Source: Hamiltosporidium tvaerminnensis FI-OER-3-3 (lineage: Eukaryota; Fungi; Microsporidia). Taken from it: DNA of 64,000 nucleotides. The stretch lies in assembly GCA_022605425.2 (NCBI GenBank), contig CM061253.1, positions 124,001-188,000 on the forward strand, in the 5' to 3' direction. Made by a program: the position numbers and the translations under genes. A model generated the notes under the pieces. That model saw nothing but the letters and a program-made list of their open reading frames with translations, was not told the origin of the DNA and made no database searches. The first letter of the stretch is position 1, and every line of letters begins with the position of its first letter. Below are positions 22,078-56,973 of this stretch, piece after piece.

Positions 22078-22190
22078 GGAATGAGAATAATAATGATAAG
22101 AGGAATAAGTATTGATAGGAAGAATAAGAATAAGGATTGATAGGAAGAATAAGAGGAATAAGAATAAGAAGAATAAGGATTGATAAGAAC
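22078..22190. repeat. Degenerate (AATAAG/GAATAAG)n purine-rich microsatellite
   Basis: Visible repeats such as aagaataagaataaggattgataggaagaataagaggaataagaataagaagaataagg, directly abutting the retrotransposon start codon. Confidence 0.7.
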
Positions 22191-34199: not shown

Positions 34200-34281
34200 T
34201 ATAAGATTTTTCGATCAATATACTTCCTTGGAATCAATATCATAATCCTTGCAATCAATATCATAATTTTTCAATCAATAT
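34200..34281 (+). mobile_element. Orphan left-type TIR of the Tc1/IS630-like transposon family
   Basis: TATAAGATTTTTCGATCAATAT... followed by about 3.5 copies of the 21-bp unit AATCAATATCATAATCCTTGC, matching the TIR at 42396. Truncated by the 3' end of LINE copy 2. Confidence 0.7.
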
Positions 34282-37200: not shown

Positions 37201-38071
37201 TTCCTTCCAAGCGGATCTAGGCTTTTTCTTGCGTGTTGCCTCGTCATAGCATACCTGCGCAGCTTGCATGATATACGCGGCTTCCGTAATTGACTCAGGT
37301 ACATGACCTCCTGCATATTCACCGACTACTCGATTAATGAGATCAGAACTTTACTATCAACCAATTCATTTGGATGTTTTCATGTTCGGACCACCACTTT
37401 TCCAATTTCCTTACTCGAGATTACTTTGATTTTACTCAAGAATTTATCTCTTATGTTTATGTACTCCGTGGTGTCGGTCAGGGTACATGTATCAGTGAGA
37501 CGAGTGGCGATTCTACGTCGCTCTCCATTCTCTTCTGATTTTATTTTCTTTCCCATCTCACTTTGTGCCAATTTTTTTAACACTTCGAGAGTTCAGTGGA
37601 GCCGAATTTCTCATTATAGTACCTGTGAAGCTCTGTCCAGCCATTTCTTGGCATTCTTTGAAACCTTGTCTGTACTGCAAAAAAAACAATTCGAGGCCAT
37701 TCCTTCAATGCTGTTACGGAATCGAATATCGTCCGCAATGCCATTAGCCTGTTACCTTCCGAAATAGCTAGAGCACAGGGGCTTGTCATGTCGTACGATG
37801 GCTCGCACGCAGAGACTTCAACCGAAGAGGGAACTGGTGCATTAGGCGAAGGTAAGGTGTCAAGCCCACTATTTTGCATTTCACTGCATGTTTGGCTTGG
37901 TGGTGGAGGTGTTATTGTTGTGTAGGAGGAGGAAGGTAGGGAAATCGCCGGTGGGTGTAGCTTTCATTTTTGTACCTCACTATCACTCTTCTTCACCTCA
38001 TCAGCGTCGTTTGCAGCCTTTATTTTGGAATTTTTCGATATTTCGCTGCTAACATTTTTCTTTCTACCCAT
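34279..38071 (-). mobile_element. Non-LTR retrotransposon, R4/Dong-like, frameshifted copy 2
   Basis: 385-aa RT fragment (35490-36647: YRPITC, WIDVKKAYDS, QGDSLSP, FIDD, YKYLG, KERLYLP) and CCHC/RLE fragments (34509-35204). ATG at 38071 (MGRKKNVSSE). 3' end ACCCAGAATTTTATTAAAT. Confidence 0.9.
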
Positions 38072-38263: not shown

Positions 38264-41200
38264 ATGGGTAGAAGAAAAAAAGTTGACAGCGAAAATATAA
38301 AAAATGAAGAAATAAAGGTTGTAAACAACTCGAAAATTAGTTTAAAAGAGACAAAAACGTGTGATAGAGATGTATTAACTATATCCGAGACGGTTCCACC
38401 AAAAACAGATCATCTATAATAACACCCACTCCCCATCGAGCAATACGCTTCAGGTTACTTCAATCAGCCTGCTCGATTCCGAAATCCCTTCTTATTGTCC
38501 CGATTCGTCTGCGGGTAGACCAGCCAAAACAATGGAAAACCTCAATGCACCTGCCATTCCAGAAGGAAATCGACTGATGGTATTGCATTCAATACTTGAC
38601 TCTGTCACAGCCGTAGAGCAGGAATGGCCAAGAACTGCTATGTCAGCAGTGCAAAAAAGGTTTGAGAGAATGCCTAGAAATGGCTGGTCTGCAATTCTTA
38701 GTTACTATAATGGGAAATTTGGTCGAACTGTTGATATCGATTTGTTAAAAAAATTAACACATAATGAGGCAGAAAAGGAAATAAGGCAAGAAGAGAATGA
38801 AGAGCGACGTAGAATCGCCACCTTTCTCGCCGATCCCTGTTCCTTAACTGACACTACACTCTATATGAACCTGAGAGAAAAGTTCTTGTGTAAAACCAAG
38901 GAACTCTCTGCGAAGGAAATCGGAGATGTAGTGGTTCGAACTAGAAAACTTTCAAGTGAATTGGTTAATAGTAAAGTTTTAAAACTCCTAAATCGGATCA
39001 CAGGTGAATATGCTGAATTTCATGTGCCTAAGAATGTTAGTGATGCAGCTCGAATCATCCAGGCGGCCCAGGTATGCTATGACGAGGAAACGCGTAAGGA
39101 GAAGCCCAGATCTGCTTGGAAGGAAAACATAGAAAGTAAAATTTCTAAGTTAGTACTTTCCAAAGATCTCCTCGAGAAGGCTCGTAAACTGGAAAAGCTC
39201 TCTACTTCGATAACGAAAAGTCTCAGAAAAATTATGCGAGAGTTTAATCTAGACTTAAGCAAAATAAATGATCTCTCTGAGGCTTTGGTTAAGAAGAATG
39301 AGCCTTTGAATGTTTATGAGTAAAAAATTACGATTTATGAAAGTAAGAAGCAATTTCGAAAAGAGAATCGTATGTTTGAGTTATTCCGAAGTCGATTCTA
39401 CCGAAGGCTATCTGAGCACGTTGAATCTGAGCATGTGGTTCATCGTCACGAAATTTCAGAATTTTGGTCTACAATGTGGAACAAAAATAATAAAGTAGTT
39501 ACATAAGATGAGTATTTGATACCTTTCGTGTCAGATACGCAACAGACCACGTTTCCTTCATTTGAAGAGTTTATAGATATTATCAATTGGCTGCATAATT
39601 GGAAAGCCGCTGGAATTGATGGTATTTATAACTTTTACATCAAGAAACTTACGAGCCTTCATAAATATCTTTACGATATTATGAAAGCCATATGTTTAGA
39701 AGGAACGCCTCAAGCCGATTGGTATTATTGCGGAGTTACTTATCTTATACCTAAAGGTACACCAAAGACGGCTCAGATTACAGGTCAATAACTTGTATGT
39801 CAAATCTGTATAAACTGACTACAAAATGCGTTACTAAAGCGGTTCAGGTTGAGGTGGAAAGACGAGGATTACTTTAAGATAATCCGTTGGGAGCGGTTAG
39901 AGGAGAGAAAGGAGCAAAAGAAAAGGCCATAATGAATGTTGCAATTAATAAGGAATACGGAAACAATCTTAAGGCTACATGAATTGATGTCAAAAAAGCT
40001 TATGATTCAATAGATAAAGCTTATTTGACACAAGTCATCGAAAACCTTAATTTACCTGATTGGATCCTGAAATTTTTTAAGCTACTTATTTCAAAATGAT
40101 AAACTGATATTTCAGTAAGGCCTGAAAAATCATGAGCAAGAAGATTGATAGAGGGATTCTGCAAAGAGATAGTTTGTCACCATTATTGTTTGTGTTGTGT
40201 ATGGATCCATTGAGCCGAAAGCTTAATGAGAAATACACAAAGTGACAATAAAGACAGATGCAGAATCCTACGCGACTAATCATCGCTTATTCATTGAGGA
40301 TCTTAAGCTCCTTGCCGAAGATGGACAAACATTGCAAGAAATGACGGAAGAGGTTATAAAGTTTATGAATAATATAGGATTTGAAATTAACAAAGAGAAG
40401 TTAGCCACAACTGATCCATGTTGTGAAGATACTGCTACTCTTCTTAAAGGAATAGGTGTTTATAAATACCTTGGAATGTTAGAAGATAGCAGAGGAATTC
40501 CAAAAAGTAAGTCGTTTGAGAAAGTACAGACTAAACTTATAGCACGAGTTGAAAGATTTTTTCGCACGAGATTAAATGCAAGAAATTTATTTTGAGCCAT
40601 TAATCAACATGCAATTTCTTTACTAAACTATCATATAGGTGTACTCCGACTTGAACCGGCTGACTTCTCTAAGTTAGATGATGCGGTGCGGGCAGTGTTA
40701 GTAAAGAACAAAATATATCTACGCCCAGGATGCAAAGAACGTCTATACATTCCACGTAAAGAGATTGGAAGAGGTTTACATAGTGTCGAGTTCAAAAGCG
40801 AACATATGCTTTTGCAACTCTTGGATTGTCTGGAAAAACATAAAGATACATCGACCAGAAGAGCAGCAATCCTAAAGGTTGAGAATAATAATAAAACCCA
40901 CCTTTCACTAATTAAAAACTTTTTAAAAATAAAATACGGGTTGGAAGAGGAAGTCACAAAAAAGAAATTGGAAGAAGCTCAACTAGCTAACCTATATAAC
41001 GAAATCAAAAACCGAAAACTACATTCAAAGTTATATAGCGCTAGAAATAACGAGCTGGTAAGTGTAAATGACTCCTCAAGATGGTTAAAGAAAGGAAGTG
41101 TAAGACCACGTGATGAAGCAGTGTTCTATTACATCCAGGATAGAAATTTATTCTGGGGGGGGCAGAAGGTATGTGTCAACACTGCAACCAGTCTAGGAAA

Positions 41201-42052
41201 ACAGTAGATCACTTGGCAACGAGACGTGAAAAAATGCTTGGTCATGACTATACTAGACGACATAATGAAGTGGTACGATGTATACATTTACTCTTGCTGA
41301 ATAAATCTAAGTTTAAGTCTTTGAAACGAATTAGAAGCCACTCGGTTCAAGAAATTCTTGATAACGAATATGCAGAGATAAGAGTGGAAACCAGAATAAA
41401 AACTGATGTCAAGATTCGGTGTAACAGACCAGATATATTTATTTTAGACAAGAGACAGAATAGTATAACCCTCATTGAAGTAGGAATCACATCCCAAGAC
41501 TCTCTTCAAATAGTTGAAACAGAGAAGCTTAGGAAGTATGACCTATATAGCAAATGAGTTAGGTCTTATTTAAAAATGCAGTGTAGATATAATTCCTTAT
41601 GCGATGGCCTGGGATGGTATTGTGACAAAATACCATAAGACGTATGTTAAGAGACTACAAATACCCATGAATATAGAGGCATCTATACGATCCATATTAC
41701 TCAAGAAGACTGTCCAAACAATTTCTTTTGATCGACAAAGAGGACTTGAGTCTGGACTAAATGCCGAGGAGAGCTGGGAGAGAGCATCATTAAGTGTTAT
41801 TTTAGGAGCTGAGATACATAAACAACCAATACCCCCTTTAAAGCAAGTAGACAACGAGGAAGATGATGTTAAAACGGAAAATACAAAAAATATTTTACCC
41901 CTTATTTTGGATGGTATAACCACAGCAAAGGAACCAACAACTAATACAAATGAAGAGTTGGAGTTGGAGGAAGAAATAGAAGTGGTTGAAATGGTGGAAA
42001 GAATTATTTAGAAAAGAGAAAAATTTGTTAACCCAGAATTTTATTAAATAAA
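38264..42052 (+). mobile_element. Non-LTR retrotransposon, R4/Dong-like, frameshifted copy 3 (more divergent subfamily)
   Basis: MGRRKKVDSE start; WKAAGIDG, YKYLG, KERLYIPRKEIGRGL, CQHC..DHLAT, RHNEVV and RPDIFI..IEVGIT fragments with many stops. 3' end AACCCAGAATTTTATTAAATAAA. Confidence 0.9.
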
Positions 42053-42395
42053 TATATTTCATTTTTAAAATATTTAAATTTATTGTATTCAGGATAGTGA
42101 ATTCTTTGAATACGATTTTCGATATTTTTAGGTAAAATCTATAACCTTTCCATTTAATTTAATTTTTTTATACATTTAATATAAAGTTCTATATTATCAG
42201 TAAATATTTGTAAGAAAAAAATGCGAAAAAAAAACATTTTAAATTTATTTATACATTTATTTAAAATTTTTGTTTTAAAATATAAATTTGAAAATAAAAG
42301 ATTTTTAAGGTATTTATTATTTTCTAAAATCGGAAAATTTAATAGTCTAAAAAATTGAGGCAAAGTTAAATTTATGTAGTTCCCATTCCAGAATA

Positions 42396-43920
42396 TAGGG
42401 TTTATCGATCAATATAATAATCCTTGCAATCAATATCATAAATTTTCGATCAATATAATAATTCTTGCACTCAATATACTACTTTTTCGATCAATATAAT
42501 AATCCTTGCAATTAATATCATAACCCTTGCAATCTATATAATAATTATTTTTAAAAAATAAAAATTTAAACAATAATTCATTCATTATAAAATTAACTCG
42601 CATGTCAAATGATTTTTCAGGAAAAATACCAACGTGAACAAATATGATTTTCCTGTAGGTGAAACACCGGAATGTAAAGAGTGCGAAAATGACAATGTTT
42701 TGAGGTGTCTTATAGAAAAATCGGGATCAAATGATGAAAATCTCTCCATAACCACTATTCCAACTCTGAGGAAACAAAAAGTTTCTATTAATGATCGAGA
42801 ACGCATAATTGAAAAGACATTAGAAGGCTATTCTATGTCCGCAATTGCCTCGATATATCGAATAAATTACCAGACGGTTAATAGTATCGTTAGACGATAT
42901 TTAAAAACCGGCCTGGTATTTGTCGAGAAAAGAGGTGGTGATAGGCGCTCAAAGCTACCTTTGGAAATAAAAGAGAGCTTACAAACCTATGTTGATTTGG
43001 AGTGTACAAAAACCTTGTATGAGTTGGTAGAATGGGTCAAATGTACATTTAATGTTGATGTGTCAACTAGTACAATCGATAGCGCACTAAGGGAGTTCCA
43101 TTACACTCTAAAGCGTGTAACATTAGTGCCTGAGCGTAGAAATACACTTTCGACAATTGAGCTAAGAACAAATTACGCAACTAGTTTTCGTGAGTTGGAG
43201 GTTGATAACGAAGACAAAAACTTTGTCTTTTTAGATTAAGTTGGGTTTGCAGTAGTAACACGCCCCAGCAGAGGTCGTAATATGAGAGGTGAATCTGCAT
43301 ACTTATCTGTAACAGCAGCTCGAAATAGAAATATTTTGGTAGTCGCAGCAATGAACAAATATGGTTTGATATACCATAAGATTCATAAGAGGGCCATAGA
43401 TGATGAGGATTTGAAATTATACATTAAGGAGATTAATGAAAGTTGTCAACGGCAAGGAACCTAGACTCCTATATTTGTATGGAAAATGCGAGAATTCATC
43501 ACTATCGGGGATTGAATGATGATGAGGAAATTGTTTCGTATCGAATAAAATATCTTCCACCTTACTCTTCATTTCTTAATCCAATTGAGAATGTATTTTC
43601 AGTCAGGAAAAATAAAGTAATTAGAAGTGGTGTTCGTACCGAGCCTCAGTTGAGAATATTAATTTGTAGAAAATTTAATGAGATCACGGGAGAACATTGT
43701 AATTCTTTTTACCGTAAAATGTTAGAATATTTGCAAAAGGCTGAAGTAGGGCAAGTGATTCTTGAATAATAGTAATAAATCTCAAGTACTATTTATAATT
43801 TTATTTATTAAATTTCTATTTTTTAAAAATAAATATTATATTGATTGCAAGGATTATTATATTGATTGCAAGGATTATTATATTGATTGCAAGGATTATT
43901 ATATTGATCGAAAAACCCTA
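42396..43920 (+). mobile_element. Tc1/IS630-like DD34E DNA transposon, defective
   Basis: Ends TA|TAGGGTTT.TCGATCAATATAATAATCC...GATCGAAAAACCCTA|TA, i.e. TIRs with TA TSDs. TIRs are built of 21-bp units (about 7 left, 4 right). Encloses a transposase pseudogene. Confidence 0.9.
42602..43769 (+). pseudogene. Tc1/IS630-family transposase pseudogene
   Basis: HTH-type N-terminus (RIIEKTLEGYSMSAIA...RGGDRRSKL...VSTSTIDSAL). FVFLD* has TAA in place of the expected E. MENARIHH...LPPYSSFLNPIE has 34 residues between the catalytic positions, with the second D changed to E. Frameshifts near 42615 and 43460. Confidence 0.85.
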
Positions 43921-43925
43921 TAGTA

Positions 43926-44260
43926 TTAAAACCCCTTTATATTCTAATTTTTAGATGACTGTTAATTAAAACCCCTTTATATATCAGTATAACTAATACT
44001 AATTATTAACACCTTTTATATATCGGGATAACTCATACTACTTATTAACACACCTTTATATACTGGAATACCTTACACTTCTTAATAGCACCCCTTTAAA
44101 TAATAGAATAACTCATACTAATTATTTAAACCCCTTTATATACTAAAATACCACATACTACTTTAACACCCTTTATATACTTGGAATACCTTACGCTACT
44201 TTAACACCCCTTTATATATCAGTATAACCCATTCTAATTAATAACACCCCACCACCCTTC
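43926..44260 (+). repeat. Non-coding array of (T)TAA(C/A)ACCCCTTTATA with 38-40-bp period, about 9 units
   Basis: Motif cores near 43931, 43971, 44011, 44050, 44090, 44130, 44168, 44206 and 44246. Confidence 0.8.
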
Positions 44261-44280
44261 TTTCTTATTAACAACCCAGA

Positions 44281-44304
44281 AGGACCCACCCGACAAAAAA
44301 AGAA
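44281..44304 (+). promoter_or_regulatory. CCC-type motif upstream of the kinesin start codon
   Basis: GGACCCACCCGACAAAAAAAGAA-ATG. CCC shortly before ATG is a known microsporidian start-region signal; it also precedes 8766 and 62082. Confidence 0.4.
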
Positions 44305-47300
44305 ATGCCAACCCTTCTTAACAATTGTACAGCCAAAAAAACGATTTCAGTAAAAATACGTATAAAACCATCACAGAGTAGTTCTGATGTACCATACAGT
44401 TCAACGCAAATAACAGTCAACAACCGTACATACAATTTCCAGCACATATTTCCACCTACTGCGTCACAACCCCAACTTTTTGAGCATATTGTACCACTTC
44501 TTGATTCTTTTATTGCTGGGTTTAATACTACTGTTGTTGTTTATGGACAGACAGGATCAGGTAAGACGTATACTATGGGAACAACACCAGAGCAGATGGT
44601 ATATAATTATGAGGGTGATAGTTATAGTGGTGAGAATAACACCCCTTATGTTACTAAGGGAGAGGATAACACCCCTTTATCTATAAATATTAGGAATAAC
44701 ACCCATTATATAAATAATAGTGAGAATAACACCCCTTGTATTAGTACTGGCAATAATAACACCCCTTTATCTATAGGTACACAGAATAACACCTTCCTAA
44801 ACGATAATACTGTTACTAACACCCCTATAATTACTACTACTAATACTAACACCCATATAATTACTACTCCTAATACTAACACCTCTTTAAGTAACACATC
44901 TAATACTAACACCCCTTTAAGTACCACTCCTTATACTAACACCCCTATAATTACTACTCCTTATAATAACACTACTCTTACCAATACCCTTGGTATTCTT
45001 CCTAGATCTGTTATTTACCTTTTTAACAACATAAATGTCCCTATAATTCTTTCTTTTATAGAAATATACAACGAAGAGGTTTATGACCTTTTATCTGATA
45101 ATAAAGTACCTTTAATTATAAGAGAAAATAACGGTATACCAATACTAACAGGTGTTAGTAAACACACAATTTACAGTACAAAATGTGCGTTTAAAAAATT
45201 AAATAAAGGTTTATTGGAGAGAAAAACAAAAAGTACAAAAATGAATTTAAACAGTTCAAGATCTCATGCAATAATAACATTACAAGTAAAAGACACTTTA
45301 CTTACATTTGTAGATTTAGCAGGATCAGAGAGAATGGAGAGAAGTGGTGTGAAAGGAGAAAAAGTAAAAGAATGTATTTGTATTAACAGTGGACTGTTAA
45401 GTCTTAGTAATGTTATTAATTCGATGTATAAAAAAAATAAACATATTCCTTTTAGAGACTCTAAGTTGACTAGACTGTTACAGCCTAGTTTTATTGGACA
45501 GTGTTATACATTAGTGGTAGGGTGTATTAGCTTAGAGGGAGTTGATATGGGAGAAGGGGTTAATACTCTTGTGTACTGTTATCGTATATGTTGTATTGAG
45601 GGTTATATTGTAAGAAGAATGGGTGCTAGTTTGGATTATAAAGAAGAGGTGTTAAAGGTAAGGAAAGAGAATGAAAATTTAATTGGGGAAATAAGAAAGT
45701 TGGAGGGTGTTATTGATATGTTAAAAAGAGAAAATGAGAAATTAAGGAGGGGTGTTAGTGATAGTAAGAGTAGGTTGGAGGGTGATATAGGTAGGGATAT
45801 ATTAAAGGGTGTTAGTAATAATAAGAGTAGGTTGGAGGGTGTTAGTAGTAAGAATATGTTAGAGGCGGTTAACTATAGTACTAATATACAACAGGGTGCT
45901 AACTATAGTACTAATGAACAACAGGGTGTTAATATAAGTACTAATAAACAACAGGGTGTTAGTAATAGTATATATGGTTATAAGGGTGTTGAAAATAAAG
46001 ATTTATTGAATAACAAGGTGTTTACTCCGAGTAAAATTATAAAGGGGTTAAATATAGGTAATACTACTATTAATAATAAGAAGGAATATTTACATGATAG
46101 ATTAGGGGGTGTTAATAGATCTGTTATAGGAGATAGTAGGTTAAGGGGTGTTAATAAGTCAGTAGTAGGGAGTGGTTTAAGGGGTGTTAATAAGTCAGCT
46201 GTAGAGTGTGGTTTAAGGGGTGTTAATAGGTCCGTAATAAATGATAGATTAACAGGTGTTAATAAGTCTGTAATAAATGATAAATTAACAGGTGTTAATA
46301 GGTCTGTAATAAATGATAAATTAACAGGTGTTAATAGGTCTGTAATAAATAATAAATTAACAGGTGTTAATAAGTCTGTAATAAATGATAAATTAACAGG
46401 TGTTAATAAGTCTGTAGTAGAAACTAGATTAACAGGTGTTAATAAAGGTACCAACATCTCTAGTAGGTTAACGGGTGTTAATAGATCTGTTATAGATGGT
46501 ATTGAATCAAAGGGTGTTAATAATGTTACCAATATGTCTAGTAGATTAACAGGTGTTAGCAAGGAATCAGATAAACAAGAGAATAGTAGTGTGAATACAC
46601 CTGTTGTTACAAGAGGTATATTTAACACTTCTTCAAATGCAAATTATCAACGATTATTAAAAGATAGACTTGTTAATAATAAAACCCCTTTATCACAAGA
46701 TAATAAGAGTAATGTTGTTTGCACTCCTTTATCACAAGATAATAAGAATACCGTTGTTAACGCCCTCTTAGCGCAAGATAACAGCACTACTGTTACTAAC
46801 ACCCCTTTACTACACACTGATAATACTAACACTAACACCCCTTTATTACACACTAATAAAACTAACACTAACACCCCTTTATTACATACCAATAATACTA
46901 ACACTAGCACCCCTTTATTACATACCAATAATACTAACACTAACACCCCCGTTACTTTAAAAAGAAAAGATTCAAATCAACCAGATAGTAAGAAAATAAA
47001 GGATGATAAAAGAAGAGTAACTTTTAAAATTAATACAACGTTAACACCTGTTAAATATAAGAAAAAATTTAAAGTAATTAACACCCTCTTATATAATAAA
47101 AGACCTGTTACTGGTATATCAGCTTATAAGGGTGTTATTTATACTTGTAGTCTTAATAACACCATTACTGCCTATAGTATAAATAAAGGGGGTGTTATTT
47201 CTTCATATGAAGATAAAGAAGGGTTAAGTAATTTAAGTGTAATAAATGGGTGTTATTTATATAATAGTAGTTCATCTCTAAATAACACCCCTTTATTACA

Positions 47301-48171
47301 AGATATAGATACTAGTAATAACACCCCTTTGTTTAGTAACTCACCTGTAAATAACACCCCTATTACCACTAATACATCCTTACTAAATAACACCCCTATA
47401 ATTACTAATACATCTTTACTAAATAACACCCCTATAAGTACTAATACATCTTTACTAAATAACACCCCTCTATCTTATACTATACCCTTTACTGATAATA
47501 TGACTGTGACTGACTCTAACGTGTTATATTACAGCAATAATAATTTTAAGGTTATTGATATGAAATATAATAAAGAGGTGTTAAAGATAAGAACAAGTAG
47601 TACAATAACAAGTATGAAAACAAAGGGGTGTTATATAATAGGAGGTCATGAAAATGGTAATATTTCAATATTTGACAGTAGAATGTACAATAAACCGTTA
47701 TATTATAAAAATATACATAAAAGTACAATATTTAGTATAGATTTGTACAAAAGTAATATTTTTAGTGGATCTAGAGATCATACGATAGGTGTATTTGATT
47801 TTAATTTAAATAATACTTTATTACTTAATCCACCACACTATGATAGTGTGATGTGTGTGTTGGTATATAAAGATAGTTTAATAAGTGGTAGTAGAGACTG
47901 TTCTTTAAAGAGGTGGAGTATTGAAGATAAGAGTGTTGTTAAGACTTATCCTTATGCACATGAAAGTTGGGTTAAAAGTTTGTGTCTGAGTGATGGGTTT
48001 TTTGTTAGTGGAGGTAAAGACTGTAAAATAAAGGGGTGGGGTTTTAATGATAAGAGTTTGGTTAGTTTAGGGGAGTGTAGTGTTAAAGGGGGTGTTAATT
48101 GTATTGTAGAAGATGAAGGGGTGTTATTTGTAGGTAGTCAGGATAAGAGTGTATATGTTATAGGTGGTTAG
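44305..48171 (+). CDS. Kinesin-4/KIF21-like motor with C-terminal WD40 repeats and low-complexity repeat insertions
   Basis: P-loop YGQTGSGKTYTMG, FIEIYNE, switch I NLNSSRSHAI, switch II FVDLAGSER and HIPFRDSKLTRLLQ; a short coiled coil; WD40 motifs SGSRDHTIGVFD, PPHYD...SGSRDCSLKRW and AHESWVKSL, which resemble the KIF21 C-terminus. Intact 1288-aa ORF. Confidence 0.9.
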   Translation: MPTLLNNCTAKKTISVKIRIKPSQSSSDVPYSSTQITVNNRTYNFQHIFPPTASQPQLFEHIVPLLDSFIAGFNTTVVVYGQTGSGKTYTMGTTPEQMVYNYEGDSYSGENNTPYVTKGEDNTPLSINIRNNTHYINNSENNTPCISTGNNNTPLSIGTQNNTFLNDNTVTNTPIITTTNTNTHIITTPNTNTSLSNTSNTNTPLSTTPYTNTPIITTPYNNTTLTNTLGILPRSVIYLFNNINVPIILSFIEIYNEEVYDLLSDNKVPLIIRENNGIPILTGVSKHTIYSTKCAFKKLNKGLLERKTKSTKMNLNSSRSHAIITLQVKDTLLTFVDLAGSERMERSGVKGEKVKECICINSGLLSLSNVINSMYKKNKHIPFRDSKLTRLLQPSFIGQCYTLVVGCISLEGVDMGEGVNTLVYCYRICCIEGYIVRRMGASLDYKEEVLKVRKENENLIGEIRKLEGVIDMLKRENEKLRRGVSDSKSRLEGDIGRDILKGVSNNKSRLEGVSSKNMLEAVNYSTNIQQGANYSTNEQQGVNISTNKQQGVSNSIYGYKGVENKDLLNNKVFTPSKIIKGLNIGNTTINNKKEYLHDRLGGVNRSVIGDSRLRGVNKSVVGSGLRGVNKSAVECGLRGVNRSVINDRLTGVNKSVINDKLTGVNRSVINDKLTGVNRSVINNKLTGVNKSVINDKLTGVNKSVVETRLTGVNKGTNISSRLTGVNRSVIDGIESKGVNNVTNMSSRLTGVSKESDKQENSSVNTPVVTRGIFNTSSNANYQRLLKDRLVNNKTPLSQDNKSNVVCTPLSQDNKNTVVNALLAQDNSTTVTNTPLLHTDNTNTNTPLLHTNKTNTNTPLLHTNNTNTSTPLLHTNNTNTNTPVTLKRKDSNQPDSKKIKDDKRRVTFKINTTLTPVKYKKKFKVINTLLYNKRPVTGISAYKGVIYTCSLNNTITAYSINKGGVISSYEDKEGLSNLSVINGCYLYNSSSSLNNTPLLQDIDTSNNTPLFSNSPVNNTPITTNTSLLNNTPIITNTSLLNNTPISTNTSLLNNTPLSYTIPFTDNMTVTDSNVLYYSNNNFKVIDMKYNKEVLKIRTSSTITSMKTKGCYIIGGHENGNISIFDSRMYNKPLYYKNIHKSTIFSIDLYKSNIFSGSRDHTIGVFDFNLNNTLLLNPPHYDSVMCVLVYKDSLISGSRDCSLKRWSIEDKSVVKTYPYAHESWVKSLCLSDGFFVSGGKDCKIKGWGFNDKSLVSLGECSVKGGVNCIVEDEGVLFVGSQDKSVYVIGG
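44632..44990 (+). repeat. Coding array, 30-bp period, AATAACACCCCT core (NNTP/NTNTP), about 12 units
   Basis: ENNTPYVTKG EDNTPLSINI ... YTNTPIITTP inserted between the P-loop and GILPR. Confidence 0.85.
45745..46565 (-). repeat. Coding array with AGG(G)GTGTTAAT core (GVN/GVS); mainly 30-36-bp units, reverse complement of the NTP core
   Basis: QQGVN units (30 bp), LRGVNKSVV units (33 bp) and near-perfect LTGVNKSVINDK units (36 bp). Confidence 0.85.
46675..47470 (+). repeat. Coding arrays with TAACACCCCT core (NTNTPLLHTN and NNTPIITNTSLL; 36-bp units)
   Basis: Two blocks, about 46675-46950 and 47280-47470. Confidence 0.8.
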
Positions 48172-48175
48172 TAAA

Positions 48176-48480
48176 TAAAGGGGGTGTTATATCATAAGTA
48201 TGATACGCTATATGTATTAAAGGGGTGTTATATCATAAGTATGATTCGATGTATGATTAAAGGGGTGTTATATAATAAATATGATCAGATGCACGATTAA
48301 AGGGGTGTTATCTAATAGTAAATATTTCTGATCGGTGTTAGTATAAAGGGTAATAAGAGGGCGTTATTTATAGTAAATAAGTACATATAATAAGCGGACG
48401 TTAGTTATATTATATATGTACATCTAACAAGAGGGTGTTATTCATAGTACTAACCTACTCTTATATAACAAGGTGTTATT
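48176..48480 (-). repeat. Non-coding array of ATTAAAGGGGTGTTAT, 40-bp period, decaying distally
   Basis: AGGGGTGTTA at 48221, 48261 and 48301, a variant near 48180, and weaker copies near 48358, 48433 and 48471. Confidence 0.8.
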
Positions 48481-48929
48481 TATAATATACAAGCTTAGAT
48501 CTTTTAATTTTTAAAAATTAGTAAATAAAGGTAAATTTTATATAAAAGAGTTGATATTTCGTCTTTGATTTTTATATTTAAAAATAATCTTGTATTTACT
48601 GTGAATTATTATAAATCATTAATTTATATTTTATAAAAATGATAAGAATAAGACTCTTCTTATATTTAAAACAAAATTGTAAAAACCCTTAGATTTATCA
48701 AAACTTAGAAATAATTCAAACTAGCATTGATATTTAAATAGAAAGCTATAAAAAGAAAAATATATTGTAACTGGTATTTATTTCAGTTGTTTTGATTGTA
48801 GTAGAAGATTAATAACAATTATTATTGTTATTACTAAATATCATGAAGTTAAATAATTGTTTATCTATCTAATACCTTCATGTTATTGGTCTAACTTTAA
48901 TTATATTACACATATTGCTTATTATAATC

Positions 48930-49649
48930 TTTATTTAAAAGTATCACATCTTTTTAAAATAGTAGTAAGTGTTATATTTGTTTTCATGAAATTAACGCAG
49001 TTCTGGGTTTAACATAAATAACTCCAGCCCAAAAACTCCATCAGTACCCCTTGGGATACCTACATCCCAAAGCCTTTCATCTACCAGGTGTGTAGAACCT
49101 AATTCCTAGGCGAGGCAGTTGCCCGGAGTTCGTTAATGTCCGTTGCATGGAGTGTGATCGAAGGCCGAAGCCCCCTGTTCTCCAAAGACTTTGCAGCATT
49201 CACTTACTCTACACAGACTGAACCCAATAAACCTTTAACTAAGATATATTCCAGATACTTACATGGGATCCACTTAGACAGTGCAATGTCATACCAACAG
49301 GTATAACCTGCTACTTAGCTCTTCCGGCTTTTAATGGTTTTTTGTTTTATATCTCCCAAGCGCCAAGTCTTCTAACCCGAGTGAGCAGGCTAGGTTTTCC
49401 ATGCTTTTACATGGCAATTACCTACATGTTCAGCTGCGGTCTGCAATCTGGTTACATAAAAGACTATAAAATATATTTGTATAAAAAGCTTCCCATTTCT
49501 TAGACCTCTCCTCCTTATAACAACCCATGAACAATCGAAGATGTAATATGGTTTTTATTCTACCAAAAATTCAAACAAAGATCCTCACTCTGGTTTCACA
49601 CATTCTATGCCAATCAAGAGGTTTTTTATTTGGTTATCCTCCCTCCACA
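48930..49649 (-). mobile_element. ~715-bp non-coding structured retroposon (family B), copy 2
   Basis: Reverse complement starts TGTGGAGGGAGGATAACC and ends GATGTGATACTTTTAAATAAA. Highly similar to 53470-54180. Several hairpins, including GGGGC-UUCG-GCCUU. Confidence 0.85.
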
Positions 49650-52600
49650 TTGTACTATCGAAATAATTATATATAATAAAAACAATTTTTGCTTTTTTTA
49701 AAATAGGACTAAGTTGAAACTTTATAGGCTTTATAAATGAATTGGTTTCAAGCAATATTTCTAAATATATTCTATATAAAGACTTTGTTAAATTACAAAC
49801 TATCAAATTGTAAAAGATTTTGAGAGTTTCTATAATAGTTAGAAATTTTTTCCATTTGAAATTAAGTAAAAATTCTAACCTTGATCTCATAAGATATAAA
49901 TAGGCTACATCGAACCAAAATTTAAAATTTTAGATTTTACTGGTATTTGTATTTTGGTCTGAATTACGCTTTCTTTCATATCTTCCTCCAGTAGCAATAT
50001 TTTAAACTATACACTGCAATTGGTTTTTTAAAAAACAAAGTTATAATATCATTAAAGTTTGCGATAACTGCTACTGTTTCTTGTAAACAACATTTCTAAT
50101 TAATATATTGGATGCTTGTATATCAATATCGATATATTTCATCTATGTCATTCCAAAGTCTGATTGAAACCTAAATGCAATATTCTTTATTCGATAAATT
50201 AAAGGTAATATTTAGTTTTAGTACTATTTTGTGTGTAATCTCGATTTATAAGTCGTAGTTATATGCTCGAAGGGGTGTTGTATTAGTTATAAATAGGCAT
50301 AAAATATCCCTTTAACTTGTAAGAAACTATACAGACACCTCTGCCGTTTAGGAAAATCATCTGATTTAATCTGCGGGGTTTTCTATTCAGTTTCTGAGTC
50401 ATTTTTTAATGAATAAAGAAAATAGCGGCCATTTTTAGATAGTATTATGATCCCAGGTTTCTGACCAAAAGAAAAATACACACATTATAGAATTTGATTT
50501 GTTATGCTGGTGAAAATTTGTTTATGGGCTCTAATTTTACACAAGTAGTTACAAATTTGACCAATTATTCGTTTTATTGCCCTATAGATATGTTTTTTTG
50601 ATGTGGTCTGAATAAAATTTTCATTTTTCTTAGATCTAATAATATTCAAACATACTTAAATCAAGTATCTAAAATATTATGATTTTTCAAAACTACGGTA
50701 GTAAAACCTAGTTTGCTTTCCTTAATTCATCATATTTTGAAGTATAGAAAAAAAGTATATCGCTTGACCTAGTTTTTGTTAGTTTACTATATTAAATAAT
50801 GATATAATCATAAATGCTCATATTTGTGGTATCATATGATAAATACTGCAAAATTTCTTTGTGCAACTCTCATCCAAGAATGTATTGATTTCTTATCTTT
50901 CCCACTTTAAAATTAGTATTTATATTATATTACGACAAAGTGGCTATGTTTGAAGTACGTCTTTAACAATGAATCGCTCTAATTCCCGGGATTTCTGTAA
51001 AAAAATAAACTTTCAAACAAATAGAAATCACAGTGTTGTATTTATGCCTTTTAAAGCGCTCGTTTTAGGTGAATCATTTATTTTGCTTTTTTTTCAAATC
51101 TATTTTGGTTGTCTTTTAAATACCGCAGTTTTACTTCTATAAATATTCCGTGTTTTAAAAATTCTTGAAAATGTATTTTCTCTCATATTTAGCAAATTTA
51201 AGACATAAAAAATTTGGATTTTTAGTATATTTTTTTACAGGTTCTTCATTTAAAATTCTTTTTATTCAAGAAAAAACAAAATTTTACAAACATATGTTTG
51301 CCAAATCTTCATTTTTCAACTCTTTTCTAGAGTATGATGAGTATAAAATTCAATTTTGCAGTCTTCTATATATTTTATTAGTTTCTTTAAAGTACTAAAT
51401 GAAATTTATTATGTGACATAGATAGGTCACTCGATAATTAATACAATCAGAAGTTCTTTTCAAGCAATGTTACGTTTTTATTTTTTTTGATTTTTAAAAT
51501 GAATTAATAATGTTTATTTATCATGATCCGTTCCAGAGACTTTGATTCATATTCCAATGATACTTATTACGATAATATATTTCGCGGCTTTCTTCTTAAA
51601 TTTCATATTTCGTAGTAATTAGGGATAAAAAGAAAGTCAAAACGCACTGTTGTTTATTCCAGAATCTCGTGCATTTATAGAAATGATTCCATCTCTTGTA
51701 TTTGAGACCAATTTATATTTATCAAATGTGATTTGCTTAATTCGAACAAAATAAGAATAATTTAGCAAGGATACCCGTTTCGGTATCTATTTAAAGTTTA
51801 TACGAATACATTTTTAAGCTGTTGAAAGAAGAAAATTGGACAGCAAGTTAAACTAAAAAACAAAATTTGCATTTTTTACGGTTCACACTTCTTTTTTTTG
51901 GTATTAAGAATATTTACGTTCCCATTTAAAAATATTTTGAATAGAAATTTTATAGAGCAATCGAAATAGATAGTTTTCACTTTGTCTTATCAGAGACGCA
52001 AGACGCAGTAGACCATATTTTGAGCGCGTTAATTCATGTTTACTGCAAGTTTTAAACATATTTATATTTCTGACTTGGCTTTGTTAGTCGGTACTATCTT
52101 TTTTACCTCTCTATAGCATCAATCTATGTTTTTCATCTGTTTGATTTCGTCTTTCCTGGGCTCATGTATGAATATTTATAGACACTTTGTCCACAATCTG
52201 AATAGGTTTGTAATCAGGTAACTTTTTTCTAGCGGAACCGTTGATTAATAATAATAATACAATGTTCGGGCTGATTATGTATTTATTATGTCTGTGGCGG
52301 ATTTTCCAAACCTTCATTTTCACGAAAGAAAAAAGAAATTAAAGTTTCAAGTAGATCGATAAGAAAGTTTTATATATTATAGATTTTAAGAGCTTGATTT
52401 TAAGATTTCAGCTGCATGTATTCTCATTCATCAAAAAAAAGCGAATGATTATTCCATTAAACCTTTATTTATGTGTTTTATAAATTAACTATCTTACTTT
52501 TGTTCCACATAGTAGATTAAAGGATCAATTTCTGTATGATAACTTAATTTTAAAATTTTCGCCGAATAAATTTCTTAAAACTCTTACTAAATATCTTTTT

Positions 52601-53469
52601 GGCAAAATATGGTTTTCTTTAACACTCAATACTTCAAATATAAAATATAAAACGCAATTGATCCGTATTTGAGCCTTAACTAAAAATTTAATTTCTTTGA
52701 TTATGTTAAGTTTTAACTCGTTTTATAAAACTTTTTGTATTTCAAAAAGCAAGCTCCTCATTTATCTTGCAATATGATTAATGAAATTCTTCAAGTTTTA
52801 ACAAATTTATATTTCTATTTTTTAGGTGCCTCAATATATCTTTAGATTATAAAACTAACTTATACATATTGAATTGTAATGATCTTTTAGGTTATAACAT
52901 TTTTTAAACCTTGTTTTATATATAACTCTAATTCGATTTTATACATTGCTATTTACTCAATTTTTTTGGCTTTTTAAAAATCTTTTATAAAACTTCGTTG
53001 AAAATATTTAAACTTAGCCACCAATTTATTTTTCTATCATATTTATAAAAGCCATAAACAAACAAAAGACATTGAATTATACAACAGTCAAGTTATATCT
53101 AGTTGTTGCTTTCTTCGAAATCAAATTTTCCTTTTATTACTGTCAAATCATTAGACACACTAAATTAAAACCAAAAAATACTTTCTATTCCATATTTATA
53201 CACTCATATTTCTTAAAAAATTTTTACAGTGATTTCTAATATTTTATAATTCGAAACTCAAATACCAAAATATTTCCCCTTACAAAGTATTTGACATATA
53301 GGAATCATTTATCTTTTTATAACCATAAAAAGGTTGTATTTTCGGTCCCTAACACTTTATTCTTTCATTAAATAGGAGAATCGAAAATAAGACACATTTA
53401 TTTGAAAAGTAGATATATTTAAATTTATACCTGATTCAAAAAAATAACATATCCTCTATAAACATAAAA

Positions 53470-54180
53470 AGTTGAGGGAGGATAACCAAATAAAAAACTT
53501 TTTGCTTGGTAATGAGTGTTTAAACTGGTGTGAGAATCATTGTTTGGTGGGAATAAAACTATACTACATCTTTGGTTGTTCCATGGGAGTTGTTATGAGG
53601 GGAAGAGGTCTAGGAAATAGTGAAACTTTTTCTACAGATTTATTTGTAATTTTTTATGTAACTAGATTGCAGACCGCAGCTGAACATGTAGGTAATTGCC
53701 ATGTAAAAGCATGGAACCCTAGCCTTGCTCACTCGGGTTAGAAGACTTAGCGCCTGGGAGATATAAAAATAAAACCCATTAAAAGCAGGGAGAGCTAAGT
53801 AGCAGGTTATACCTGTTGGTATGAAATTGCACTAACTAGCTGAACCTCATGTAAATCTCTGAAATATATCTTCAATAGTCTATTGGATTCATGAAGTGTA
53901 GAGTAAGTGTGAATGCTGCATAGTCTTGGGGAGCCCAGGGGGTTTCGGTTTTAGATCACACTATGCAACGAGCATTAACGAACTCCGGCTAATTGCCTTG
54001 TCTATTAATTAGGTTCTACACATCTGGTAGATGAAAGGCTTTGAGACGTAGATATTGCAGAGGGTACTGATGAAGTGTTGGGGTGCAGTTATTTATGTTA
54101 AACCCAGAACTGCGTTAATGTCATGAAAACAAATATAACACTTACTACTATTTTAAAAAGATGTGATACTTTTAAATAAA
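53470..54180 (+). mobile_element. ~715-bp non-coding structured retroposon (family B), copy 3
   Basis: Inverted relative to copy 2. Ends AATAAA and is followed by G-TCGATAGTACAA. Confidence 0.85.
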
Positions 54181-54510
54181 GTCGATAGTACAAGTCGGAA
54201 ATCTAAACCGTCATAGACGAAACCATTACGATATTATGATTGAGTTATTTGATTTACGTATTAAAAAGCAGCCTTTTTTCTTTATAAATACATACAAAAA
54301 GACTTTAATATTACCAAAAAACAAAGTAAATAATAATTTATAATTAAATTTTATATGACCCAAGTTTATTGATTATATAAATTATAAATATTTGTATTAC
54401 TAAAAGAATTAACATATAAATGTAAAATAATAGTTAGTTTTTTAATTCTTCATTGTTTAATTAATATCGTGATCCAAAGTATTGTTTAAAACTATTAAGA
54501 TTTCAGATTC

Positions 54511-56973
54511 TCAAACTATATCTTCGAGGGGCAAAGGATTTATATTAATTTTCATTATCTGAGAATTTGAATTCACCTTGCATCCACGCAATTCGACATT
54601 CTTTAATATTGGCTGTGAAATAATAAAGTTTTCAATGTCAGAATCAACATTTGTATTAACCAGAACGAGTGTTTCTAGAACCAAACATTTTAAAATTCCG
54701 TATTCCTTCAAGAATTCAGAAAATACTTTATTGTCTAAAGTAATTACAAGGTATACCAGGTTTGTTATCGAAAATATTTGAGAAATATCTGATGAACAAA
54801 GCTTGTTTCCACATAAGTTGATTTCTCGAAGAGAAGAAATAAGCGCCTTACTTAAATGGCTCATAAATCCATATGAGAGGTCGCAATGACATAAATTGAG
54901 TCGAGATAGACAATCAAATTGGTAAATAAAAGAAAGATTTGTTAATTCTAACTTATTTCCCGACAGATCCAAATCTACCAACTTACTTGCAAATACATAT
55001 TCGGAATTTAAAAAATCCAATGAATTATCTGTCGAAAAAGATAAATTTATATGTTGAAGTACTTCAAACGCAGTTATGTGGGTCAATATATCTCTGGTTA
55101 TTAAATTTTTGGATAAACTTAATTTTTTTGTGGTGGTATGCAATGATTTTTGACTTAAAATCCTCTTTAAATATTTTATTTCATTTAACTGATCTAAATA
55201 CAAAATCTCTACTTGTATATTTGAAGAAAAATATTCGGAAAAAAATTGATTCAATTTTGAATAAGATAGATCTAAATATTGAAATTTATTTTGCCAGTTT
55301 TCGTGATCTTCAAAATATCTCAATCGCTCAAAATTAACTCCTCTCACACTTAGAAATTTTAAAACTTTGCACAACATAAATGATTGTAAAATCTTGTAAT
55401 TTAAACGAGAGTAATTTGCTCTGAGTTCTTTCAGCGTCTCGTTTCTCAGGGCGTTTAAATCTTTTGAACTTCCATTGTATATACAACACGAAAGATCTAA
55501 AAGTTCAATGTGTAGGGCATGCAAATGATTAAAAAATCCATTTAGCAATAAAAAACCTACTATATGCAGCTTTCTTAATTTTGGAAAATAGTATGACAAT
55601 TTACACAAAAGAAAATTTAAAGATGTATTACATTTGACTAAAATAAGTGAATCTAAATTTTTTAAAGTTTCCAAAAAGCAATAATCTGTACTTAACAATT
55701 CTAATCGTTCAAATTCGACATAAGTTATTTCATTATTTTTGATTGATTGTAATGAACTAAAAATTGAAATAAAACTTGTTCTCATTTCATAGTTCGTTGT
55801 ATGTTTTGTAATATTGTTACATGCAAAATCCAAATCCTTAAATTCAGTAAAATATATATCATCACTAGAAATCTTAATACCTTTTATTTTGAACGAATAA
55901 ACTATACAATTCAAAAATACAAATTTATCTTTGGAATTTTCTTGTGAGATTAATTCCAGAGCTATAGGTGTGATTCTAACCATGATTTCATCTATATTAT
56001 GTTTTTCAAATGAAAGTATATTTTTATTCTGTTTCTTCTCGACTAAAACCAATTCTTTACGATTAGAATTATAAGTTATATCGATAGTTTCATATAATAA
56101 ATATAAGAAAGGTAAAAAATATTTGTTATAATTGATAAAATCAGCGCCCGTTAGATTTGATACACCGACATTAGATCTATCTTGTAAATACAAAAATATA
56201 AATGGAAGTAAATTTTTATAGAATGTTAATAAGGCATCCGAGTCTGAATAACAGGTGAGATCGTACAAAAGCCAAATTAAACCTAAGAACTCTTCTTTTT
56301 TTAAACCTGCAAAATTCAGATTCCATCCATTTTTTAAAATGTTCATACATTCTTCAAAAATAACACAATCTATATTGCTCTTCGTGATATCTTTAATATT
56401 TAGTTTTATTTCGTTATTTCCAGATCTTTTTAATTCATCAAAATACTTAGATTTGATTATAAAATCATCTGAATAATCAAAACTAAACATATCTGTATCT
56501 TCGGACAGTAAAATTTCTGTATCACCCAGGTTTTCTATACAAAAATCCTTATTATTGAACACAGCAATTCCTTCAATATTGTGTTCTATAATATCGCTTT
56601 CTGACGGTAAAATATTTTTTGCATTTGGCACGTGGTATTCTATTTGATTGCTATAAACCTTGAAATGGCGCTGAGAAGCAAAAAAAGAAGGTTGAAATTG
56701 TCGCAAAGATCTTATTTCAGACCCATATTTTTTCTTTCTACTATAAGAATTTAAAAGAGAAAGAAGCAGAGGCTTCTCGGTAGCTGGATTTTCTAAAAAA
56801 CCGGCTCTTTCAAAATCTATAACAATTCTAATGCAATTATTGGGTCGCAGAAACCTACAAATCAAAATAATGAATGTATAGTTTCTAAAACTTATAGGTA
56901 ATTGTAATATTTTTTTGCATTTTTTCTTGTGAAAACTAGCATTGAGTAAAAATAATACGCAATCGAAATACAT
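54511..56973 (-). CDS. Leucine-rich-repeat protein (820 aa), lineage-specific family
   Basis: Intact long ORF with repeated LxxLxLxxN/C motifs in the C-terminal half (IELLDLSCC, FQYLDLSYSKL, LVDLDLSGNKL, LSRLNLCHCDL, LREINLCGNKL) and hydrophobic N-terminal segments. Confidence 0.85.
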   Translation of the reverse strand: MYFDCVLFLLNASFHKKKCKKILQLPISFRNYTFIILICRFLRPNNCIRIVIDFERAGFLENPATEKPLLLSLLNSYSRKKKYGSEIRSLRQFQPSFFASQRHFKVYSNQIEYHVPNAKNILPSESDIIEHNIEGIAVFNNKDFCIENLGDTEILLSEDTDMFSFDYSDDFIIKSKYFDELKRSGNNEIKLNIKDITKSNIDCVIFEECMNILKNGWNLNFAGLKKEEFLGLIWLLYDLTCYSDSDALLTFYKNLLPFIFLYLQDRSNVGVSNLTGADFINYNKYFLPFLYLLYETIDITYNSNRKELVLVEKKQNKNILSFEKHNIDEIMVRITPIALELISQENSKDKFVFLNCIVYSFKIKGIKISSDDIYFTEFKDLDFACNNITKHTTNYEMRTSFISIFSSLQSIKNNEITYVEFERLELLSTDYCFLETLKNLDSLILVKCNTSLNFLLCKLSYYFPKLRKLHIVGFLLLNGFFNHLHALHIELLDLSCCIYNGSSKDLNALRNETLKELRANYSRLNYKILQSFMLCKVLKFLSVRGVNFERLRYFEDHENWQNKFQYLDLSYSKLNQFFSEYFSSNIQVEILYLDQLNEIKYLKRILSQKSLHTTTKKLSLSKNLITRDILTHITAFEVLQHINLSFSTDNSLDFLNSEYVFASKLVDLDLSGNKLELTNLSFIYQFDCLSRLNLCHCDLSYGFMSHLSKALISSLREINLCGNKLCSSDISQIFSITNLVYLVITLDNKVFSEFLKEYGILKCLVLETLVLVNTNVDSDIENFIISQPILKNVELRGCKVNSNSQIMKININPLPLEDIV

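What the first reader, a model, noticed from the sequence alone, without database searches (positions are those of the whole stretch)
43926..48480. One DNA motif (TAACACCCCT/AGGGGTGTTA) saturates a 4.6-kb domain and writes two different protein repeats from opposite strands
Seen: the kinesin's NNTP repeats (AAT AAC ACC CCT) and RGVN repeats (AGG GGT GTT AAT) are reverse complements of one core. The core occurs dozens of times in blocks of alternating orientation: C-strand ~43930-44990, G-strand ~45500-46570, C-strand ~46680-47470, G-strand ~47570-48480. It also fills the non-coding flanks and appears singly within folded domains (ILTGVS, EGVNT, KGVIY, KGCY, KGGVN, EGVLF). It is almost absent elsewhere in the window (one near-copy at ~50271). 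The period is 38-40 bp outside the ORF but a multiple of 3 (30, 33, 36) inside. Inference: the repeat is generated or selected at the nucleic-acid level and the protein only tolerates it. Candidate explanations are a telomere-like G/C-strand motif added or copied during break repair, a phased array of sites for a Rap1/Tbf1-type factor marking a chromatin domain, origin or centromere, or fold-back dsRNA in the transcript. I recall similar GVN-rich repeats in Hamiltosporidium proteins but know of no described mechanism.
Basis: partly seen in the sequence, partly recalled or inferred. Interest (0 to 1): 0.85.

Follow-up and report, generated by a model that had tools for sequence, protein, structure and literature searches.

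The report
Polarised telomere-like motif islands in microsporidian
In the Daphnia parasite Hamiltosporidium, short telomere-like DNA words pile up in islands of essential genes, always pointing toward fixed junctions, and have reshaped both silent and protein-changing positions, which suggests an undescribed directional process acting on the DNA, not a protein function.

Summary
Observation confirmed; it is one example of a genome-wide, Hamiltosporidium-specific system. The exact 10-mer occurs 1,123 times, and on contig C1 62 of 68 copies lie in 8 islands covering 2% of the contig. The islands are essential genes: this KIF21-type kinesin, Prp8, TAF2, dynein, Sec31.

It acts on DNA. The core GGTGTTA is the top 7-mer even in non-repetitive coding sequence (33 vs 3-10 expected), in all three frames. 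Inserts run G-strand then C-strand (95 vs 3). GC skew at four-fold sites ramps from -0.76 to +1.0 between inserts. Cores sit on a ~30-bp lattice and flip in place. Whole units are polymorphic between isolates.

The arrays are not telomerase copies (1 of 309 cores continues as telomere), but the telomeric word AGGGTTA is enriched 8-fold with the same polarity. Best reading (0.4, inferred): a footprint of recurrent breaks or nicks whose 3' ends face the junctions, with telomere-type factors biasing repair. Rivals: Okazaki-junction barriers, or selected binding arrays (origin, holocentromere, insulator).

The scan noted this system before on other DNA; I found no paper describing it.

The parts
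42396..43922 (+). Left boundary: Tc1/IS630-like DNA transposon with 21-bp modules in its inverted repeats; not part of the motif system
   Evidence: HTH and DDE_3 hits; tandem modules; many contig ends at 43922
43927..44251 (+). Non-coding 5' flank array, C-strand cores, period 38-40 bp; an extra 37-bp unit in another allele
44305..48171 (+). KIF21/kinesin-4-type gene, 1288 aa (motor, coiled coil, WD40); orthologues 748-850 aa in most microsporidia
44596..44990 (+). In-frame insert in the motor: one G-strand variant at 44611, then a C-strand array (NTP), period 30; 60-bp indels in H. magnivora
45000..45640 (+). Alignable motor block with a C-to-G skew ramp at third codon positions and single cores (45148; AGGGGTTA variant in EGVNT)
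45645..46558 (+). G-strand array (GVN/GVS), periods 30, 36, 39; holds the 30-bp unit shared with unlinked loci (45892-46075) and a 57-bp deletion allele (45765-45821)
46559..46679 (.). G-to-C polarity junction (cumulative skew peak near 46620); further junctions near 44640 and 47270
46680..46950 (+). C-strand array (NTP), periods 39 and 36
47042..47255 (+). First WD repeats with single cores of both orientations (C at 47042, 47079, 47157; G at 47128, 47188, 47246)
47283..47469 (+). In-frame insert in the propeller, C-strand array, period 36/33
47500..48168 (+). Alignable WD40 block with rising G skew and single G-strand cores at ungapped positions (47574, 47624, 48088, 48117)
48180..48478 (+). 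Non-coding 3' flank array, G-strand cores, period 40-41 then 37-38; an extra 38-bp unit in another isolate
48929..49648 (.). Right boundary: ~720-bp dispersed repeat; not part of the motif system

Best explanation
The islands are the accumulated footprint of a directional DNA process, not a protein adaptation. SHOWN: G-rich words (GGTGTTA, GGGTGATA, AGGGTTA) and a general G-over-C excess build up on whichever strand runs 5'-to-3' toward a junction, as a telomere G-strand runs toward a chromosome end. Junctions lie in gene flanks and in tolerant loops. SHOWN: arrays gain and lose whole 27-60-bp units, and selection keeps only in-frame units in ORFs. INFERRED: neighbouring same-strand cores serve as microhomologies for these duplications; in-place core flips on a 30-bp lattice are quasi-palindrome template switches; units shared by unlinked loci are templated copies. 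INFERRED: the junctions are sites of recurrent double-strand breaks or persistent nicks, so 3' ends face the junction from both sides. A telomere-type factor with relaxed specificity (CST/POT1/Myb-like), acting on the exposed G-strand, limits resection or biases repair toward alleles with correctly oriented G-rich words. This gives a polar molecular drive strong enough to change conserved residues, fading over a few hundred bases.
For: Polarity: mixed inserts run G-then-C in 95 cases and C-then-G in 3, over 65 proteins. Four-fold-site GC skew -0.76, -0.11, +0.43, +1.0, +1.0 across 11 blocks, p 2e-7, with no AT ramp. GGTGTTA is the top 7-mer in 8.3 kb of non-repeat coding DNA: 33 vs 2.9 (codon shuffle) and 9.9 (synonymous permutation); 1 in 12.5 kb of control genes. 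Cores at ungapped positions of the kinesin alignment. AGGGTTA 55 vs 7.2 under local shuffles, 52 of 55 in local polarity; all 8 interstitial telomeric 15-mers on C1 lie within 5 kb of a motif copy. Opposite-strand cores 30 bp apart in both orders. Whole-unit indels among alleles. 7% of units share at least 80% of flanks with an unlinked locus, 0% in shuffles. TERT, FEN1/Exo1-sized nucleases and a weak Spo11-like hit are present. gBGC tracts reported in Hamiltosporidium (PMC6944219).
Against: No break map, binding data or candidate protein. Extra cytosine damage on resected DNA alone would lower GC, whereas G doubles as C falls, so a G-gaining bias must be added. Allele differences are mostly transitions with few C-G changes and gave no clear direction. 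Recombination in these species is reported as very low (PMC6944219). Hotspot-making motifs are normally lost by drive, not gained (own knowledge). The same geometry is produced by Okazaki junctions without breaks.
Confidence: 0.4

Rival explanations
1. Replication footprint: a protein bound at the inserts stops lagging-strand nick translation, so Okazaki 3' ends face the junction from the left on one strand and from the right on the other. Flap errors of about 30 nt give the duplications. Islands are zones replicated in both directions.
For: Same geometry as the best explanation, acting every cell cycle, which suits G rising while C falls. Units of 27-42 bp. Blocks between inserts are almost never under about 70 aa, median 120 aa (2 of 85 vs 34% expected if random), a nucleosome-like scale. 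Islands 50-400 kb apart. Okazaki ends gather at nucleosomes and Rap1/Reb1/Abf1 sites in yeast (PMC8496332); yeast leading strands are C-rich and termination zones show upward jumps (PMC3459929).
Against: Yeast replication skews are about 9% and decay over 20 kb (PMC3459929); here about 80-100% over 0.3-1 kb. FEN1-sized gene present. Does not by itself explain gain of a specific 7-mer. Block lengths may reflect protein domain sizes.
Confidence: 0.2
2. Selected cis-array: oriented, phased binding sites with a function (holocentromere units, replication origins, or insulators shielding housekeeping genes from surrounding transposon chromatin).
For: Many islands per chromosome bounded by transposons; no centromeres found in these genomes and holocentricity proposed (PMC12449221); strong short-range skew marks Candida centromeres (PMC2924309, PMC3459929); non-coding spacings cluster at 28-32 and 38-41 bp; ten Myb loci exist.
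Against: Unit number varies freely among alleles; absent at the orthologous loci of Astathelohania and Edhazardia; kinetochores inside Prp8 or dynein are unlikely; selection for sites does not explain skew at four-fold positions outside cores; Candida junction sign is opposite.
Confidence: 0.17
3. Telomerase (or another reverse transcriptase) writes short patches directly onto broken 3' ends, which are then rejoined head to head.
For: Native polarity matches; TERT present; perfect 15-20-nt telomeric pieces inside islands and one head-to-head junction in Prp8; known in mammals (PMC2246262).
Against: Dominant word is not the telomere repeat; 1 of 309 cores continues as CCTAA; 1 and 0 genome-wide cases of a telomeric dimer next to a core; terminal arrays are nearly pure; does not explain the synonymous ramp.
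Confidence: 0.08
4. Selection for fold-back structure in the mRNA.
For: The G-to-C junction region folds better than shuffles (z -5.05).
Against: Arms only 70-85% complementary; flank covariation weak; arrays also in flanks and as single-polarity clusters; any G-then-C order folds as a by-product.
Confidence: 0.05
5. The units derive from a transposon (R4-like LINE or Tc1-like termini).
For: The abundant R4-like LINE carries cores, including a G..C pair about 250 bp from its 3' end.
Against: Its terminus and flanks do not match island units, and it has no skew oscillation; single cores arise without indels.
Confidence: 0.04
6. Protein-level selection for GVN/NTP linkers plus codon bias.
For: Arrays are in frame and sit in loops where other microsporidia also have inserts.
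Against: Three frames, both strands, non-coding copies, fixed codons, synonymous ramp.
Confidence: 0.02

Closest known systems
Core-sharing minisatellites at recombination hotspots (Jeffreys core / PRDM9-linked; own knowledge)
   Same: Unrelated tandem arrays of 27-42 bp share a short G-rich core; copy number polymorphic
   Different: Fixed head-to-head polarity, synonymous skew ramps, cores gained singly in conserved coding sequence, concentrated in essential genes; no hotspot evidence here
DNA uptake sequences of Haemophilus and Neisseria (PMC2817400)
   Same: About a thousand copies of a ~10-mer, in coding DNA in several frames, inflating the encoded tripeptides; drive-like accumulation
   Different: Eukaryote with no known competence; clustered in islands, polarised, tandemly amplified
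Interstitial telomeric sequences inserted at breaks (PMC2246262)
   Same: Telomere polarity; short perfect telomeric pieces occur inside islands
   Different: Dominant word is not the telomere repeat; units are heterogeneous 30-40-mers; single cores appear without insertion
GC-skew switch at Candida centromeres (PMC2924309, PMC3459929)
   Same: Very large, short-range strand skew of unexplained origin in a fungus
   Different: One per chromosome, abrupt negative-to-positive, non-coding, no motif; here several per island, abrupt positive-to-negative, inside genes, tens of islands per chromosome set
KIF21/kinesin-4 with C-terminal WD40 (host gene)
   Same: Motor, coiled coil and WD40 architecture; 33-35% identical to microsporidian orthologues
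   Different: About 500 extra residues of motif-derived inserts

Membership tests
Interstitial telomeric sequence | Tandem copies of the species' telomere repeat | tested here: not met
   Telomere is (CCCTAA)n (PMC10542269); 1 of 309 cores continues as telomere; only a minority of short true pieces
Interstitial telomeric sequence | Insertion relative to an empty orthologous site | tested here: inconclusive
   Arrays are inserts against orthologues, but single cores sit at ungapped positions; no close relative with empty sites
Core-sharing hotspot minisatellite | Tandem units of 10-60 bp with a shared core, variable in copy number | tested here: met
Core-sharing hotspot minisatellite | Next to a mapped recombination or break hotspot | not testable with these tools
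   No break or crossover map for this organism
Uptake-sequence-type driven motif | Over-representation in coding DNA beyond codon and amino-acid use, in several frames | tested here: met
Uptake-sequence-type driven motif | Genome-wide, roughly even spread without strand polarity; sequence-specific DNA uptake | tested here: not met
   91% of C1 copies in 2.2% of the contig; polarity 95 vs 3; uptake itself not testable
Candida-type regional centromere skew | One negative-to-positive switch per chromosome in non-coding DNA | tested here: not met
   At least 8 islands on C1, several positive-to-negative junctions each, inside ORFs
Holocentromere unit / origin / insulator | CENP-A, ORC/MCM or factor occupancy | not testable with these tools
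   No chromatin data
Transposon-derived repeat | Units match an element terminus with target-site duplication | tested here: not met
   LINE 3' ends and Tc1 repeat modules differ from island units
Intron or RNA-excised insert | Removed from mRNA, free of frame constraint | tested here: inconclusive
   Units in ORF arrays are multiples of 3 and the 57-nt 'short isoform' exists as DNA, which argues for translation; no RNA run held the stretch

The most novel reading that the evidence does not exclude
A telomere-maintenance factor with relaxed specificity acts at hundreds of internal sites and drives oriented telomere-like words into essential genes (a eukaryotic, strand-polar molecular drive), or the islands are sequence-marked chromosome elements (holocentromere units or origins) embedded in essential genes.
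Probability: 0.3. Interest if true: 0.9.

Novelty: new variant of a known kind. Interest (0 to 1): 0.74.

Why it matters
Strand skews of this size at synonymous sites, flipping every 0.3-1 kb, and a motif written over conserved residues of Prp8, helicases and motors, are not described for any eukaryote that I could find. Centromeres, origins and recombination sites of microsporidia are unlocated (PMC12449221); the islands and junctions give a base-resolution list of candidate sites, roughly 90-140 islands by extrapolation from C1, to test with chromatin, replication or break maps. It also offers a concrete source for protein inflation and the non-synonymous excess reported in Hamiltosporidium (PMC6944219), and the polymorphic arrays are ready typing markers.

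Tried and rejected
Telomerase read-through: no telomeric continuation after cores. Hairpin with covarying stem around the core: weak. Long inverted duplication of flanks: left and right 40-bp units are 39% alike against 30-36% for unrelated arrays, and arms 70-85%. LINE or Tc1 origin: rejected. Loss of FEN1: a 351-aa XPG_N gene is present. C-to-G hypermutation: such differences are rare among alleles. Direction of recent changes: too few clean sites. Other organisms: the 24-nt shared unit is absent from metagenome contigs; repeat searches returned only Hamiltosporidium where names could be read (most signature proteins were not named). One search was a pattern slip and returned telomeres only. 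In one search one WD block overlapped an insert, so its C count is not used. Paper searches found no description of the motif; the library lacks most subscription journals.

Full report
Source. The window is G000:C8:124001-188000 of a 21.64-Mb, 17-contig assembly. The kinesin matches Hamiltosporidium tvaerminnensis proteins on a contig of the same length, and the assembly statistics match PMC10542269. Telomeres are (CCCTAA)n.

Observation. The exact 10-mer occurs 26 times, all within 44202-48310, with about 75 near copies from 43927 to 48440. The ORF 44305-48171 encodes a KIF21-type kinesin with WD40 tail. Against orthologues of 748-850 aa, the NTP and GVN arrays are inserts. The island lies between a Tc1-like transposon ending near 43922 and a dispersed element starting at 48929.

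Genome-wide. There are 1,123 exact copies, balanced between strands, against 24 for the control. On C1, 62 of 68 lie in 8 islands covering 2.2% of the contig, with clusters 50-400 kb apart. Islands examined hold Prp8, TAF2, a DEAD/DEAH helicase and a topoisomerase II-like gene (the last named from its sequence only). Proteins with the same repeats include dynein, a PI-kinase, Sec31, NTE1, midasin-like AAA, INO80-like, RNA polymerase and Sec7 proteins. Every signature protein whose name I could read is from Hamiltosporidium. The orthologous loci of Astathelohania contejeani and Edhazardia aedis lack the motif.

It is a DNA-level effect. In the kinesin 24 of 29 GV pairs use GGT GTT and 18 of 27 TP pairs use ACC CCT, whereas ACC is rare elsewhere. 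After masking tandem repeats in six genes, GGTGTTA is still the top 7-mer: 33 copies in 8.3 kb, against 2.9 for local codon shuffles and 9.9 for synonymous permutation (maxima 8 and 17 in 300 runs), and 1 copy in 12.5 kb of control genes. A few of the 33 may be decayed insert edges. These copies fall in all three frames. Several sit at ungapped, otherwise conserved positions, for example KGGVNCI, DEGVLFVG and TKGCYIIGG.

Polarity. GC skew forms a sawtooth: it rises slowly across each alignable block and drops abruptly inside each insert. With core codons excluded, four-fold sites go from -0.76 to +1.0 across 11 pooled blocks (p 2e-7), with no matching AT ramp. In 65 proteins, mixed inserts run G-type then C-type 95 times and the reverse 3 times; P/T/H fall from 18% to 5% and G/V/E rise from 8% to 25% across blocks. 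Blocks are rarely shorter than 70 aa. Island ends mostly follow the same rule, C-strand at left and G-strand at right, as here and in most C1 islands. So the G-rich strand runs 5'-to-3' toward a junction or island end, the polarity of a telomere.

How arrays change. Opposite-strand neighbours have their GGG/CCC triplets 30 bp apart in both orders, so the core appears to flip in place within a retained lattice (QQGVN versus QHPVN); this is inferred from spacing, not seen between alleles. About 40% of the listed G-then-C pairs belong to an R4-like LINE and were removed. Same-strand spacing peaks at 30 bp, with a second group at 38-42. Alleles differ by whole units: 57, 60, 60 and 39 bp in the ORF, 37 and 38 bp in the flanks, and 27-60 bp in NTE1. 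The 57-bp deletion is present in DNA runs, so the 1269-aa form exists as an allele. One 30-bp unit recurs at unlinked loci (about 70-90 times single-copy depth; 80-90% flank identity).

Telomere link. The core is almost never followed by telomere sequence, so the arrays are not interstitial telomeres; this agrees with two earlier follow-ups. But AGGGTTA is 15-fold denser in islands, 7.7-fold above local shuffles, and follows local polarity in 52 of 55 cases (many are tandem copies, so not independent). All 8 interstitial telomeric 15-mers on C1, at 3 independent loci, lie within 5 kb of a motif copy (p about 8e-4). These could also be members of the local ACTAAC/CCTAAC low-complexity family. 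TERT is present.

Mechanism. Any explanation needs 3' ends facing fixed junctions from both sides, a reach of a few hundred bases, gain of G with loss of C, and gain of specific words. Recurrent breaks or nicks with a telomere-type factor biasing repair fit best (0.4): polarity is native, and template switching explains flips, duplications and inter-locus copying (general knowledge of repair synthesis). Okazaki junctions at a bound barrier give the same geometry (0.2; PMC8496332), but known replication skews are ten times weaker (PMC3459929). Selected arrays (0.17) are attractive because centromeres are unknown here (PMC12449221), but copy number drifts freely and relatives lack them. No step of the enzymatic mechanism is shown.

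Comparison and verdict. It works most like core-sharing minisatellites combined with the drive seen for bacterial uptake sequences (PMC2817400), and fails membership of interstitial telomeres, uptake sequences and Candida-type centromere skews. I file it as a new variant of a known kind, with a 0.3 chance of a categorically new drive or chromosome element. The scan recorded the system earlier at other loci; new here are the synonymous-site ramp, the test on non-repeat coding DNA, the 30-bp lattice in both orders, the allele data and the co-polar telomeric words. Interest 0.74.

Noticed in passing
window 43837-58100 versus L034: About 70 substitutions in the island and its edges (1.2%) but only 3 in the next 8.6 kb (0.03%) between two isolates. 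Hypermutation, old alleles, or a haplotype/LOH boundary; one locus only.
   Followed up: partly
L028 3118-9999 (G000:C1 about 853-860 kb): Prp8 is split over several reading frames inside the repeats; NTE1 is likewise split in this assembly but intact in other isolates, so probably consensus errors.
   Followed up: no
window 34279-37812 (-), 18297-21831 (-), 38264-42053 (+): Abundant R4-like (RT plus restriction-like endonuclease) LINE; 3' ends in AT-rich targets, one copy inside Tc1 21-bp modules; copies sit next to several islands.
   Followed up: partly
window 42396-43922: Tc1-like element with a premature stop; its terminus contains AAAAACCCT, resembling the TAAAACCCCT variants next to it. 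Another isolate has a LINE end and different modules here.
   Followed up: partly
G000:C17:727297-728024: An 86-bp higher-order repeat containing a C..G core pair, at least 9 copies; the start of C17, which lacks a telomere, begins in a C-strand cluster.
   Followed up: no
G000:C15 842250 and 865690; C14 745795 and 786659: Exo1-sized and XPG-sized genes each occur twice in inverted orientation 23-41 kb apart: inverted segmental duplications or uncollapsed haplotypes. C1 1172062-1172176 and 1266741-1266855 also hold the same array inverted.
   Followed up: no
L015 180-400 (start of C5): Degenerate telomere-like tract (CCTAG, CCCTGG) behind a short telomere, unlike other ends; may be read error.
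   Followed up: no
L038 about 560-690; window 22084-22189: Strand-skewed CT-rich or GA-rich repeats without the core; the NTE1 island begins with one in the expected polarity.
   Followed up: no
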